64,000 bases of DNA from Lepidodermella squamata (Eukaryota; Animalia; Gastrotricha): contig JBLDXI010000009.1 of NCBI GenBank assembly GCA_047495785.1, positions 62,001-126,000 on the forward strand, read 5' to 3'. The position numbers and the translations under genes are program-made. Of the stretch, positions 19,855-25,800 are shown in pieces. The notes under the pieces are model-generated. The model was not told where the DNA came from, searched no databases, and saw nothing but the letters and a program-made list of their open reading frames with translations. Position 1 is the first letter of the stretch. Each line of letters begins with the position of its first letter.

Positions 19855-22800
19855 ATGGAGCAAGCACACGCGAAGACAGCTGAAGAGTGCCTTGCATATT
19901 TCAACGTTGACCCAGAAACGGGTCTATCGGACGAACAAATCAAGAAGGCCCAGGAAAAGTACGGCCCTAACGGTATGCCTTCCGTGTGTTATTTATTCTC
20001 ACCGTGTTTACCCGCTCGATTTTTCAGAACTGCCGGCCGAAGAAGGCAAGAGCCTCCTGGAATTGATTTGGGAGCAGTTTGAAGATGTCGTCGTTCGCAT
20101 TCTTCTGCTCGCTGCCTGCATTTCCTTCGTGAGTACTAATCTTTCAGTCGAAATATGTTTCAATTGACTTTGTTATTTGTTATAGGTCCTTGCGTTTTTC
20201 GAAGACGAGGAGGAGAGTATTACCGCGTTTGTTGAGCCATTTGTCATCTTGTTGATTCTCATTGCCAACGCCGTCATTGGTATCTGGCAAGAAAAGAACG
20301 CCGAAAGTGCCATCGAAGCCTTGAAGGAATACGAACCTGAAGTTGCAAAGGTCCTCCGCCGCAATTTTCGCGGTGTCCAGAAGATCAAGGCATCGACTCT
20401 TGTTCCTGGTGATATTGTTGAAGTCTCTGTCGGTGATAAGATTCCCGCTGATATCCGTCTGATCAAGATTTACTCTACGACTATTCGCATTGATCAGTCT
20501 ATTCTTACTGGTGAATCCGTCTCGGTTATCAAGCACACTGATGCTGTTCCTGATCCTCGCGCTGTGAACCAGGACAAGAAGAACGTGCTCTTCAGCGGTA
20601 CCAACGTCGCTGCTGGTAAAGCTCGCGGTATTGTCATTGGAACTGGTCTGGATACTGAAATCGGTAAAATCCGCAATGAAATGATGGCTACTGAGGCTGA
20701 AAAGACCCCCCTGCAGCAAAAGCTGGACGAGTTCGGTCAGCAACTGTCAAAGGTCATCACCGTTATCTGCATTGCTGTCTGGGCTATCAACATCGGCCAC
20801 TTCAACGACCCTGTCCACGGCGGTTCGTGGCTGCGTGGTGCCGTCTACTACTTCAAGATTGCCGTCGCTCTTGCTGTCGCTGCCATCCCTGAAGGTCTGC
20901 CTGCTGTCATCACCACTTGCTTGGCCCTTGGCACCCGCCGCATGGCCCAGAAGAACGCCATTGTCCGCAGCTTGCCCTCTGTCGAAACCTTGGGTTGCAC
21001 ATCCGTTATCTGCTCTGATAAGACCGGTACCCTGACTACCAATCAAATGTCCGTCTGCAAAATGTTCATCTTCGACAAGGTTGACGAGAAGGAAGTGAGC
21101 ACTCACCAGTTCGAAATCACCGGATCGACCTATGCTCCCGAGGGCGAAGTTTTCAAGAACGGCCAGCGTATTCGCGTCAGTGACTACGATGCCCTTGTTG
21201 AAATTGCCGTCATTTGCGCCATGTGCAACGACTCTAGCATCGACTACAACGAGTCGAAGAAGGCTTACGAAAAGGTCGGCGAGGCCACCGAAACCGCCTT
21301 GGTTTGCTTGGCCGAGAAGATGAACGCGTTCAACCAGGATAAGTCTGGCGTTGCCCCGAAGGAACTTGGTACCCTGTGTGCCTCGCACATCCAGAGCTTC
21401 TTCAAGAAGGAATTCACCCTGGAATTTTCGCGCGATCGTAAATCCATGTCATCGTACTGCACCCCGGCTAAGGCTGGTCTGCCGATCCCGCCAGTCAAGG
21501 GAGCCACCACTCCTCGCCAATACGTCAAGGGTGCCCCTGAGGGTGTCATTGAACGTTGCACGCACGTGCGCGTCGGCAACACCAAGGTCCCGATGACCGC
21601 TGCTGCCAAGGCCGAAATCTACAAGCTCGTCCGCGCCTACGGTACCGGCCGCGATACCCTGCGTTGCCTTGCTCTCGCTACCATTGACTCGCCGATGGCT
21701 AAGGAACAGATGGACCTCGACGACTCGACCAAGTTCTACAAGTACGAGACCAACTGCACCTTCGTTGGTGTCGTCGGCATGTTGGACCCGCCCCGCAAGG
21801 AAGTCATCGACTCGATTGTTCAGTGCCGTGCCGCCGGTATCCGCGTCATCGTCATCACCGGTGACAACAAGGCCACCGCCGAAGCTATCTGCCGCCGCAT
21901 TGGCGTCTTCAGCGAATCGGAATCGACCGAAGGCAAGTCCTTCACTGGCCGAGAATTCGACGACCTGCCCCTGGAGCGCCAACGGGAAGCCGTCCGTGAA
22001 GCCCGTCTTTTCGCCCGTGTCGAACCCACCCACAAGAGCCGCATTGTCGAACTGCTGCAGAAGGATGATGAGATCACGGCTATGACTGGCGATGGTGTCA
22101 ACGACGCGCCTGCCCTGAAGAAGGCCGAAATCGGTATTGCCATGGGCTCTGGTACCGCCGTCGCCAAGTCGGCGTCTGCCATGGTGTTGGCTGACGACAA
22201 CTTCGCCTCCATCGTCGCCGCCGTCGAGGAGGGCCGTGCCATCTACAACAACATGAAGCAGTTCATCCGCTACCTCATTTCGTCGAACATTGGTGAAGTC
22301 GTTTCGATTTTCTTGACGGCTGCTCTCGGCTTCCCTGAGGCTCTCATCCCCGTGCAGCTGCTCTGGGTCAACCTGGTTACTGACGGTCTGCCCGCCACCG
22401 CTCTCGGCTTCAACCCGCCCGATCTTGACATCATGTCTCGCCCTCCTCGCAACCCCAAGGAGTCGCTCATCTCGCCGTGGCTGTTCTTCCGCTACATGGC
22501 TGTCGGAGGTTTGTTATCGCCCACTTGCTTGTTTCCTTTTTCGTGTATATTTGCAGTGCCGATCAATCAATTACCTACAAGATTCATCTAACTGATTTCA
22601 ATTGCTTGCGTTTTGCTCTACTAACGATTGTTTGTTCCATCCAGCTTACGTTGGTGCAGCTACTGTCGGAGCTGCAGTGTGGTGGTTTACTGTCTATAGC
22701 GGCGGCCCTCGCGTCACGCTATGGCAATTGGTAAGAGTCCAGGTCACGGAACTAATCTGTGCCTTTTTATTAATTTCTAGTCTACGTCGGCGCTGCCACC

Positions 22801-25800
22801 GTCGGTGGAGCCGCCTGGTGGTTCATGGTTTACGACAAGGGTCCCAAGCTCAGCTTCTACCAACTCGTGAGTTGCCGAAAGGCGCTTGCCTGTTTGGCGT
22901 GCTCCCCCAAGCATGTTGAATCCCATCCCAATAACAACAATCAAATCAATCAATCAGTTTGATTTAGCTTGCTCGATTTGCTGTTTGATATTAATTAATC
23001 GAATGACAATCGTGTGAACATATTATTATCGTAAATTAGCTTATAGTTAGAAGGGTGATGAATGAGAGACGATAGTTAGGAGTTAGGCGGTAGTATCCCG
23101 TGCCTCCAATGACAACAAGTTTGATACCCAGGGTGGGGTTCGTGAATTGAATATGTTCATCTCCCCGTGTCGAACCTGTCGAAACCGAATGAACGGCTAG
23201 GATTAGATGGTGTTACCCAAAAACCCGTCAATAACCGTCTTGTTCGCGTCGTAGGGTCATCACGCTCAATGTCCAGCCGAACCGAAGAACTTCGAAGGCG
23301 TGCCATGCTCGACCTTTCACGCCCATGAGCCGATGTCGATGGCTCTCTCCGTCCTGGTCACGATCGAAATGCTCAACGCCATGAATAGGTAGCCGTTGTA
23401 TCAGGGGTGGTGGAATATTGGGAAAATTGATTGCTTGTATATCGCTCTTAAGAAAGGGTTAATGTGCCTATTAGACGTGCATGTATACGAAGCGGCAGTA
23501 GGCGTCATTGGAGAAGATAGATATCCGCAGGGTTGTGTGTTTATTTCAGACGAAAAATGATTGCTAACGCGCGTGCTTTTTTGATTACGTTTCCTACTCT
23601 ATAACTTACAATACCTGCTTCCTTTTTATCGCTTGTTGAATTGGTTCATTGACTTTATTGGCTAATTTACTGTTGTCTCTGTTGCCGGTGTAGTCGCACC
23701 ACTCGCATTGTCTTGCCCAAGAGGGCGAGTTCAAGGGTGTCGACTGTCACATCTTTGAACACCCGAAGCCTATGGCTATGGCCCTGTCAGTCCTGGTCAC
23801 CATCGAAATGGCCAATGCCTGCAACAGGTAAAGCGTCGCCTGCCGCAAATGCTTGCGCAAACTGCCTGCAGTGTTCTCGCTTTTTCTATCTCTCTTAAAA
23901 CTTTGTTTTCCGAAGCCAGGCATACAGATTTATTAAGCCCGTTCAATTCCATAGCTAACTCTTTTGTCGATTTTCGTGGCTATTTTACTCTTGTATTTGC
24001 ATTTCGAATTCATTCGAAATTTGTTACTTACTCAGATAATCTCGATACTCTTCAATAGTTTGACTCTCGACATTTGAAATTATTTGGAATTGAAACGCGG
24101 CGTAGAGATGATCTGTCTTGCCTCGCTAGTTTTTTTCGATGTCTTATAAGACAACCCAGAGTGATACTTACAATACCGCATGCGGAGTGAAGTCGTGAAG
24201 TGTGTGATTTACAACCGAATAACTTGAACAGAATTATTCCGATTTTTTTGCTTCTCTTTGGTCTAACAAAGATCTTTGCAATACCTTCGAACCCTCAAAG
24301 ACGACCTCAAAGGTTGCCTGAGCCATACCCTGCGTTGCACATAAAGCGATCTGTTTATTAATCGAGCGATATGCGCGCGTGATTTTCCTGATGTCGCAGA
24401 CCCTGGTGCTTTGCTTTGAAATCTGACATCCCTAACTCTTTGCTCATGTGTTGTACAGCTTGTCGGAGAACCAGTCACTTATCGCCATGCCGCCATGGTC
24501 GAACCAGTGGCTCATGCTGGCCATCGGAGGCTCGATGAGCTTGCACTTCTTGATCCTCAATGTTGACTTCCTCAACGTAAGTTTAATATTGTGAGAGCCC
24601 CGTTTCGGCATGCAATCACGAGCATTGGTTTCTTTGCAGACTATTTTCCAAATTACTCCTCTCACCCTGGAGGAGTGGGTTGCCGTCCTGAAGCTGTCGC
24701 TGCCAGTCGTCATAATCGACGAAACCCTCAAATTCATCTCGCGCAAATTCTTCGACGGTACGATACAACTAGTCGGCGGCGTGAAGTCACGCTGCGAAAG
24801 CACGGTGGCCAACCGCAGTTTCCTGGCCGACGTCGCGCCCGTGATCATTTTCTGGGCGAGCTACGTTGCACTACTTCGAGTGTCACCCCTCTTCTAAAGA
24901 AAAAACTAATAATTAGCTTGAATCTTGAATAAAAAATTATTTGTGTGCGCGTTCGACATTTTAACATTGCCTGTCCTTCCTTCTTTCAAGCCTGAGTTCA
25001 AGAGTGAAAGGAATGCTAATTAATAATATTCATTTACACATAGCCAGACCGAACTTGTTGTTCCTCCCCCATCATTTACTTAAACTAACCGCAGAATCGA
25101 TATGCGAAAATATGCAAGTTCCACTGAATCGATTGCCAATGCTTGTTTATTGCCGTTTTGTTTTGTTGCTGTGTGATAAAATGCAGAAAAGGGAGAGAGT
25201 AATCAAGCAAACGAGCATATTGAGTCGGCACCGATTACTGTCGCAAGTATCTTTTCTAGCCGCGAGAATTAGAGAATTCGAGCCACATTTGTCTCTGTCT
25301 GTCATACGCTCTATTTACTTTGTTGTTGGTTGTGTTTTCTATTGTGCATTTACTCGTACTCGTAGTCTATGCGTGCTCGAGAAAGCAAATACACTTCTCG
25401 GCTGCGGGCGCATGGATCTCGCCTTTTTTAATGATGATGTTGATGACGACGGCGGCTATGATGCACACGGAAATGCTAGTGACCAATAATCATTCCACAT
25501 CGCTTCACGAGTTGAGCTATGCGCTCATCATCGCCGCTACAAATCATTACCAGCGTGACATCCATGTCTCATCGTTTTTTATTCACAGTTGGGAACACGT
25601 GATCATTATTTGATTCTGTCTTCGCAAAAGCTCGGAATTTATTGTATTAATCTTAAAAAAAACAATTATAGGGAATATTCAAAGAGCATACGCTAAAAAA
25701 ACAATGTAGCCCGTGGCGCGTCTGTGATTACTAAACTACTATGATTTCTTCTCCGTGTGTGACCAGCAAGGCAGCCTTGTTGCGAATTTTTCTGTCATTC

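What the first reader, a model, noticed from the sequence alone, without database searches (positions are those of the whole stretch)
22645..23827. SERCA with two back-to-back pairs of mutually exclusive exons swapping TM7 and the luminal loop L7/8-TM8
Seen: two 86-nt homologous exons (A1/A2) followed by two 134-nt homologous exons (B1/B2). All four have intact splice sites, identical phases within each pair, no stops and heavy synonymous divergence, and including both members of a pair shifts the frame. Both B exons keep the luminal Cys pair and the TM8 Ca2+-site Glu (TIEM) but differ strongly in the loop. Known: the SERCA splicing I know of affects the termini, and in SERCA2b the extra TM11 tail packs against TM7/TM10 and L7/8. 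Inference: one gene builds 4 membrane-domain variants (up to 12 with the tails), diversifying the luminal regulatory face in place of the gene duplication vertebrates use. I do not know of this arrangement being described.
Basis: partly seen in the sequence, partly recalled or inferred. Interest (0 to 1): 0.9.

Follow-up and report, generated by a model that had tools for sequence, protein, structure and literature searches.

The report
SERCA pump with swappable exon pairs
A calcium-pump (SERCA) gene of an unidentified spiralian invertebrate has two adjacent pairs of alternative exons for membrane helix 7 and for the luminal loop plus helix 8. The second pair is an ancient feature of molluscs, annelids, flatworms and their kin that is already in public gene annotation, though I found no paper describing it.

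Summary
A1 (22645-22730), A2 (22781-22866), B1 (23255-23388) and B2 (23694-23827) are 86/86/134/134 nt. All have AG/GT sites, and including both members of a pair, or neither, shifts the frame.

A related metagenome contig (L001; 92% aa identity in the main exon, synonymous sites saturated) keeps all four exons. Order, lengths and splice sites match, changes fall mostly on third codon positions, and the introns are unalignable. So all four exons are under protein-level selection.

The novelty claim is only partly right.
- **B pair:** it is pan-spiralian. Tandem B1-like and B2-like exons in the same order occur in Macrostomum, Clonorchis, Capitella, Littorina and Lingula. Annotated isoforms carrying either B exist in more than 12 species. 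Two chelicerates have a single fused A+B exon.
- **A pair:** Lingula anatina has the same double-pair layout, with RefSeq isoforms X1/X2/X3 using alternative A or B. Its A pair looks like a separate duplication.

I found no paper describing internal SERCA exon swaps.

Word-index hits only hint that A1 is present in RNA contigs.

Verdict: real mutually exclusive exons, a new member of a known kind, of moderate interest.

The parts
19855..19972 (+). SERCA exon 1 (start codon to GPN|G, phase 1)
   Evidence: tblastn of P0003 N-terminus; donor gtatgc read
20028..20128 (+). SERCA exon 2
   Evidence: acceptor tttttcag, donor gtgagt
20186..22508 (+). SERCA large exon (A, P and N domains, TM1-TM6).
   Evidence: ORF; NCBIfam TIGR01116 SERCA-type at 763 bits against a cut-off of 703 on 20249-22225; 76-81% identity to named full-length SERCAs over the whole exon
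22645..22730 (+). Exon A1 (TM7 variant, divergent: [29 protein letters not shown])
   Evidence: ortholog in L001 12439-12524 with differences 3/4/17 by codon position; 31-mer words of 22575-22730 held by RNA-labelled runs X1 (0.50) and X2 (0.33)
22781..22866 (+). Exon A2 (TM7 variant, canonical-like: [29 protein letters not shown])
   Evidence: ortholog in L001 12569-12654, omega about 0.15
23255..23388 (+). Exon B1 (L7/8 loop + TM8, 'QCPAEP' type)
   Evidence: ortholog in L001 12991-13124; falls in the multi-phylum PAEP clade, support 95/88
23694..23827 (+). Exon B2 (L7/8 loop + TM8, 'QCLAQE' type)
   Evidence: ortholog in L001 13338-13471, omega about 0.14; falls in the multi-phylum LAQ[DE] clade, support 97/86
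24459..24576 (+). Constitutive exon C (SLSENQSL..., TM9)
24640..24758 (+). Exon D (TM10, ...RKFFD G|gt), site of the C-terminal choice
24759..24894 (+). Read-through tail with a hydrophobic TM11-like segment (long isoform)
   Evidence: open frame; 58% aa identity with L001 14018-14116
27257..27292 (+). Candidate short-tail exon ([11 protein letters not shown]), unverified
   Evidence: best-matching phase-1 acceptor/ORF pair with L001 15796 (APIDIEIKKRR*)

Best explanation
This is one SERCA (P2A-type Ca2+-ATPase) gene of an unidentified spiralian animal. It contains two adjacent clusters of tandem-duplicated, mutually exclusive exons. A1 or A2 supplies TM7 and the start of the luminal L7/8 loop. 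B1 or B2 supplies the rest of L7/8 (with the conserved Cys pair) and TM8 (with the Ca2+-site Glu). Each mature mRNA is expected to carry exactly one A and one B. Taking both or neither shifts the frame into premature stops, and such mRNAs would be non-productive and probably degraded by nonsense-mediated decay (inferred).

The B pair was inherited from an early spiralian ancestor. The A pair is a later duplication shared with the relative behind contig L001. The likely result is up to four pump variants differing on the TM7/L7/8/TM8 face. In vertebrate SERCA2b that face contacts the extra TM11 and luminal tail and carries the redox-regulated disulfide.

Shown: the exon anatomy, the frame logic, purifying selection on all four exons, orthology of B1 and B2 to exon types used alternatively in other species, and the SERCA identity. 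Inferred: actual one-of-each usage in this organism, free combination of A with B, degradation of aberrant forms, and any functional difference.
For: Anatomy and frame logic.

SERCA identity: TIGR01116 equivalog above its cut-off; 76-81% identity to named full-length SERCAs.

Conservation: L001/L002 keep all four exons in the same order, with identical lengths and AG/GT sites. Differences by codon position are A1 3/4/17, A2 1/3/8, B1 9/5/21 and B2 6/2/15. Omega is about 0.14-0.15 for A2 and B2, and dS is saturated for A1 and B1. The three introns between the exons align no better than shuffled sequence.

Orthologous usage elsewhere: tandem B1-like then B2-like exons in Macrostomum (L003, L004), Littorina (L005), Capitella (L011), Lingula (L012) and Clonorchis (L013). 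Isoform pairs that are identical except for B occur in Littorina, oysters, scallops, Haliotis, Pomacea, Gigantopelta, Mya, Tubulanus, Lineus, Watersipora, Schistosoma and Clonorchis. Lingula X2 uses the alternative A.

B-exon tree: win_B1 and win_B2 fall in separate multi-phylum clades, supports 95/88 and 97/86.

Weak RNA hint: words of intron+A1 are held at 0.50 and 0.33 by RNA-labelled runs.
Against: The word-index result for A1 cannot separate spliced RNA from unspliced or genomic carry-over: the DNA-like run X7 held only 0.58, and X1 held 0.52 of the whole 2.6-kb stretch, more than the exons alone would give. RefSeq isoforms in other species are model predictions, and their A/B/tail combinations may be combinatorial guesses. 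The 50-nt A1-A2 intron is ordinary for this gene (introns of 55, 57 and 63 nt), so nothing physical forbids A1-A2 joining. No intron pairing above chance was found in the window that would explain the exon choice.
Confidence: 0.85

Rival explanations
1. One member of each pair (most plausibly the divergent A1) is an unused relic of an exon duplication, so the gene makes only one TM7/TM8 form.
For: No junction reads could be examined. A1 is less canonical than A2. No transcript-derived protein of this organism was found.
Against: At a divergence where synonymous sites are saturated and introns are unalignable, A1 and B1 keep exact length, frame and splice sites, have no stops, and change mostly at third positions. 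B1 and B2 types are both used in many other species.
Confidence: 0.05
2. The extra exons serve mainly as 'poison' cassettes. Double inclusion creates frameshifted mRNAs that lower pump output, rather than producing alternative proteins.
For: Double inclusion does shift the frame, with a premature stop seen for A1+A2+B1. The A1-A2 intron is long enough to be spliced in this genome.
Against: A poison cassette needs no protein-level conservation. Here amino-acid sequence is conserved (79-86% aa identity to L001 orthologs, third-position bias), and the Ca2+-site Glu and the Cys pair are kept in both B exons.
Confidence: 0.07
3. The pairs are an assembly artefact: collapsed haplotypes or a mis-joined tandem duplicate.
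For: None beyond the general possibility.
Against: Pair members are only 57-63% identical in DNA. The same layout occurs in two independent metagenome contigs (L001, L002) and, for B, in six other genomes.
Confidence: 0.01

Closest known systems
Lingula anatina SERCA gene (RefSeq isoforms X1 XP_013421498, X2 XP_013421499, X3 XP_013421500; locus L012)
   Same: It has two A exons (86 nt each) followed by two B exons (134 nt each), all with AG/GT sites, in the same order and phases. Annotated isoforms use either A or either B.
   Different: The Lingula A exons are much more alike (72% nt, 83% aa) and share lineage-specific residues, so the A duplication there looks independent. This is an inference, and gene conversion is not excluded. 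Its introns are hundreds of nt long. It is known only as automatic annotation, and I found no paper on it.
SERCA genes of molluscs, annelids, nemerteans, bryozoans and flatworms with a B1/B2 exon pair
   Same: The window's B1 and B2 are orthologous to the 'PAEP' and 'LAQ[DE]' exon types. The tandem order is the same, and annotated isoforms differ only in that exon.
   Different: Those genes have a single A exon, which is sometimes fused to the upstream exon (Capitella, Clonorchis).
C-terminal alternative splicing of SERCA (vertebrate SERCA2a/2b; Artemia, C. elegans, Pinctada fucata isoforms A/B/C)
   Same: It is the same gene family. The window gene also has the read-through long tail with a TM11-like segment. 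Papers describe only this kind of splicing for invertebrate SERCA (PMC3527596, PMC6987452).
   Different: It changes only the C-terminus. The three Pinctada cDNAs are identical in A and B. The exon swaps here are internal, within TM7-TM8.
Mutually exclusive tandem-duplicated exons in other genes (human tandem duplicated exon substitutions, PMC9741552; coq-2 in helminths, annelids and molluscs, PMC7434440; arthropod Na+/K+-ATPase alpha, from my own recollection)
   Same: They share the genetic device: homologous same-size exons, one chosen per mRNA, often ancient and found in membrane proteins.
   Different: They are different genes and protein regions. None concerns SERCA.

Membership tests
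SERCA-type (P2A) Ca2+-ATPase | Match to the curated SERCA equivalog model above its cut-off | tested here: met
   TIGR01116 at 763.1 bits against a cut-off of 703.4, using only residues from 20249-22225. PMR1-type and PMCA-type models score far below their cut-offs.
SERCA-type (P2A) Ca2+-ATPase | P-type catalytic motifs (DKTGT phosphorylation site, [13 protein letters not shown]) | tested here: met
   [17 protein letters not shown] and [15 protein letters not shown] are all read in the ORF translation.
SERCA-type (P2A) Ca2+-ATPase | TM8 Ca2+-site Glu and the luminal L7/8 Cys pair | tested here: met
   Both B1 and B2 carry C...C and ..VTIEM... Assignment to E908 and C876/C888 of SERCA1a is from memory of the rabbit sequence.
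Mutually exclusive tandem-duplicated exon cluster | Adjacent homologous exons of equal length and phase with intact splice sites | tested here: met
   86/86 and 134/134 nt, AG/GT at all eight sites.
Mutually exclusive tandem-duplicated exon cluster | Joint inclusion or joint skipping is non-productive | tested here: met
   86 and 134 are not multiples of 3, so joint inclusion or skipping shifts the frame. In-frame stops were seen for A1+A2+B1 and for A-skipping.
Mutually exclusive tandem-duplicated exon cluster | Each member is kept by purifying selection | tested here: met
   Window against L001: third-position bias, omega about 0.15 or saturated dS, and unalignable introns.
Mutually exclusive tandem-duplicated exon cluster | Transcripts carry exactly one member of each cluster | not testable with these tools
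Protein and contig searches found no transcript of this organism. In orthologous genes, annotated isoforms carry one member each.
Spiralian SERCA B1/B2 exon pair | B1 groups with the 'PAEP' exons and B2 with the 'LAQ[DE]' exons of other phyla, in the same genomic order | tested here: met
   Clade supports are 95/88 and 97/86 on a 44-column tree, which is short, so deep order is unresolved. The order B1-like then B2-like holds in 7 loci.

The most novel reading that the evidence does not exclude
The B1/B2 switch is a spiralian-wide module that predates the split of flatworms, molluscs, annelids, brachiopods and this lineage. It gives SERCA two functionally distinct luminal-loop/TM8 states, for example differing in Ca2+ affinity, redox control of the L7/8 disulfide, or fit to the TM11 tail. 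TM7 has been duplicated into a second switch independently at least twice (this lineage and Lingula), which would point to recurrent selection to tune the TM7/TM8/tail interface. No paper appears to describe this.
Probability: 0.45. Interest if true: 0.55.

Novelty: new member of a known kind. Interest (0 to 1): 0.4.

Why it matters
SERCA is among the best-studied ion pumps. Its known isoform diversity comes from gene duplication in vertebrates and from C-terminal splicing. An internal, anciently conserved exon swap across a whole animal superclade covers the luminal L7/8 loop and the Ca2+-binding helix TM8, and here also TM7. It offers natural paired variants for asking how this face sets Ca2+ affinity, turnover and redox or tail regulation. 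It also matters for annotation and for work on the parasite SERCAs of schistosomes and liver flukes, which carry the same B pair. For this window alone the gain is modest, because the layout already exists in public annotation of Lingula and, for B, of many species.

Tried and rejected
Later queries used 20249-22225, 22286-22507, 22509 onward and 22575-22730. One local script read the whole exon from the local file for dN/dS only.

2. A second run search on 70 nt of intron plus A1 gave shares of 0.50 and 0.33. This is suggestive but cannot prove splicing.

3. The JGI scan with the A1 peptide was rejected as too short. With exon D plus the tail it returned only distant genomic contigs lacking A/B.

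4. A protein search with the last 74 aa of the large exon found no fragment of this organism (best 92%), and none extended into an A1-like exon.

5. Steric hindrance as the cause of A exclusivity is rejected. The 50-nt intron is ordinary here, next to introns of 55, 57 and 63 nt.

6. Intron pairing ('looping out') was tested. Inverted repeats and local complementarity against shuffles were not above chance in the window. Whole-intron duplex energies were uninformative, and timed out.

7. Pinctada fucata cDNA isoforms as a prior report of the B swap are rejected, because they differ only in their tails.

8. Six full-text literature searches, with two of the papers they returned then read, found no description of internal SERCA exon swaps.
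Full report
**Observation.** The stretch lies in a + strand gene whose large exon (20186-22508) translates to a SERCA-type pump. It matches NCBIfam TIGR01116 at 763 bits against a cut-off of 703, using only 20249-22225. It is 76-81% identical to named SERCAs of annelids, molluscs, flatworms and arthropods. 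The exon ends in phase 1 at 22508.

All are flanked by AG and GT. Every one-A-plus-one-B combination stays in frame and reads as TM7, the L7/8 loop and TM8. Taking both members of a pair, or neither, shifts the frame, and stops were seen for A1+A2+B1 and for A-skipping. Pair members are 57% (A) and 63% (B) identical in DNA, and synonymous sites are saturated for A1/A2 and nearly so for B1/B2. Both B exons keep the two loop cysteines and the IEM glutamate. The rest of the gene model is E1 19855-19972, E2 20028-20128, exon C 24459-24576 and exon D 24640-24758.

**Are all four exons functional?** The nearest relative in the protein collection is an ORF on two metagenome contigs (L001, L002). It is 92% identical in the large exon, with the same zinc-transporter gene upstream. 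Both contigs contain all four exons in the same order. Each is closest to its own counterpart: A1-A1 79%, A2-A2 86%, B1-B1 80% and B2-B2 84% aa identity, against 60-65% across types. Lengths and AG/GT sites are identical.

The two species are far apart, with dS 1.9 and omega 0.035 in the large exon. The three introns between the exons align no better than shuffled sequence. Yet exon differences pile up at third codon positions: A1 3/4/17, A2 1/3/8, B1 9/5/21 and B2 6/2/15. Omega is about 0.15 for A2 and B2, and dS is saturated for A1 and B1. A relic exon could not have kept length, frame, splice sites and peptide at this distance. I therefore take all four as coding exons under selection.

**RNA evidence.** This is the weak point. 

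- The run index shows RNA-labelled runs holding part of the region.
- For a query of 70 nt of intron plus A1, runs X1 and X2 hold 0.50 and 0.33 of 12 sampled words. That is about what exon-only words would give. However, a DNA-like run held only 0.58, and X1 evidently carries some intron sequence. This is a hint, not proof.
- A JGI contig scan and a protein search for transcript fragments found nothing from this organism.

**What it is, seen from relatives.** Among the SERCA homologs, two types of the B segment recur: 'QCPAEP(R/K)MF' and 'QCLAQ(D/E)E.F'.

- Littorina saxatilis isoforms of one gene are 100% identical on both sides and differ only there.
- Genomic loci show tandem B1-like then B2-like exons in Macrostomum lignano (two paralogous loci), Littorina, Capitella, Lingula and Clonorchis.
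- Cluster members show annotated isoform pairs differing only in B in oysters, scallops, Haliotis, Pomacea, Gigantopelta, Mya, Tubulanus, Lineus, Watersipora, several Schistosoma species and Clonorchis. A Logan transcript contig carries the other B type in a liver fluke.
- In a tree of the 44-residue segment, the window's B1 and B2 fall into separate clades, each spanning several phyla, with supports 95/88 and 97/86.
- Two chelicerates have single A and B segments fused in one exon. Arthropod isoforms share one B.

The B pair is therefore an old spiralian feature, not a peculiarity of this genome.

In a SERCA tree, the window and L001 form their own branch inside Spiralia. It sits outside flatworms and outside the annelid-mollusc-nemertean-brachiopod-bryozoan group. 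The species remains unidentified.

**The A pair.** Single A exons were found in Macrostomum, Littorina, Capitella and Clonorchis. Lingula is the exception. It has two 86-nt A exons followed by two 134-nt B exons, all with AG/GT sites. Its RefSeq isoforms X1, X2 and X3 use A-down+B1, A-up+B1 and A-down+B2. So the 'two back-to-back pairs' layout already exists in public annotation. The Lingula A exons are 72% (nt) and 83% (aa) identical and share lineage-specific residues, whereas the window's are 57% and 59% identical. I infer two independent duplications of the TM7 exon, though gene conversion in Lingula cannot be excluded.

**How it most likely works.** Exclusivity is enforced at least by the reading frame (shown). 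Removal of aberrant mRNAs by nonsense-mediated decay is inferred. The 50-nt A1-A2 intron (44 nt in L001) is not unusually short for this gene, whose other introns are 55, 57 and 63 nt, so steric hindrance is not supported. I found no intron complementarity above chance in the window that would loop out B1 or B2. L001 has one marginal 23-25-nt pairing flanking B2. What selects the exon is unknown.

Functionally, the swapped parts are TM7, the luminal L7/8 loop with its disulfide, and TM8 with a Ca2+-site glutamate. From established SERCA2b work, recalled rather than tested here, this face contacts TM11 and the luminal tail, and its disulfide is redox-regulated. The gene also has a conserved read-through tail with a TM11-like hydrophobic segment. 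Tuning of Ca2+ affinity, turnover or luminal regulation is thus a reasonable but untested inference. The '12 variants' figure is unsupported. Apart from the long tail, I found only one candidate short-tail exon, at 27257, by similarity to L001.

**Novelty.** Six full-text searches, with two of the papers they returned then read, found only C-terminal splicing described for invertebrate SERCA (PMC3527596, PMC6987452). None described internal exon swaps. The three cloned Pinctada isoforms differ only in their tails. The feature therefore seems undescribed in the literature I could search. It is, however, plainly present in automatic annotation of many species, and the genetic device is a well-known one.

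**Verdict.** The uniqueness claim is wrong. This is a new member of a known kind, of moderate interest. The main value is the comparative picture: an ancient B switch and a recurrent A duplication.

Noticed in passing
window 24759-24894: If the donor after exon D (GACG|gtacga) is not used, the frame reads on for 45 codons. These include a hydrophobic TM11-like stretch ([19 protein letters not shown]). The tail is 58% identical in L001, so it is probably the long, SERCA2b-like isoform.
   Followed up: partly
window 27257-27292; L001 15796: Candidate short-tail exon in phase 1, encoding [11 protein letters not shown] (L001: APIDIEIKKRR*). It has a good pyrimidine tract and a basic C-terminus like the short tails of other spiralians. 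There is no RNA support.
   Followed up: partly
L001 13227-13249 and 13549-13573: A 23-25-nt complementary pair in the introns on either side of exon B2 in the relative. It scores 31 against 19.7+-2.6 (max 30) for shuffles. No counterpart was found in the window.
   Followed up: partly
L012 (Lingula anatina) 32206-32291, 33013-33098, 33801-33934, 34634-34767: Same two-pair layout as the window. The A exons are much more alike (72% nt) than the window's, which suggests an independent and more recent duplication of the TM7 exon.
   Followed up: yes
L011 (Capitella) 15621-15809; L013 (Clonorchis) 27653-27841; L014/L015 (chelicerates): Intron positions around TM7 differ between lineages. A is fused to the upstream exon in Capitella and Clonorchis, and A and B are fused into one exon in Tetranychus and Tachypleus. 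The A/B intron that allows separate clusters is therefore not universal.
   Followed up: partly
window 20186-22508: About 75% of the SERCA coding sequence sits in one 2.3-kb exon, and the gene's short introns are 50-63 nt. Together with the SERCA tree (its own branch within Spiralia), this points to a compact-genome micro-invertebrate that I could not name.
   Followed up: partly
window about 14000 (- strand); L001 5280-6533: The cation-efflux (ZnT) gene upstream of SERCA on the opposite strand is syntenic in the metagenome relative.
   Followed up: no
P0203/P0204, P0205/P0207, P0029/P0234 (Schistosoma, Clonorchis): Human-parasitic flukes have annotated SERCA isoform pairs differing only in the B exon. 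This may matter for work that treats the fluke SERCA as a single target sequence.
   Followed up: partly
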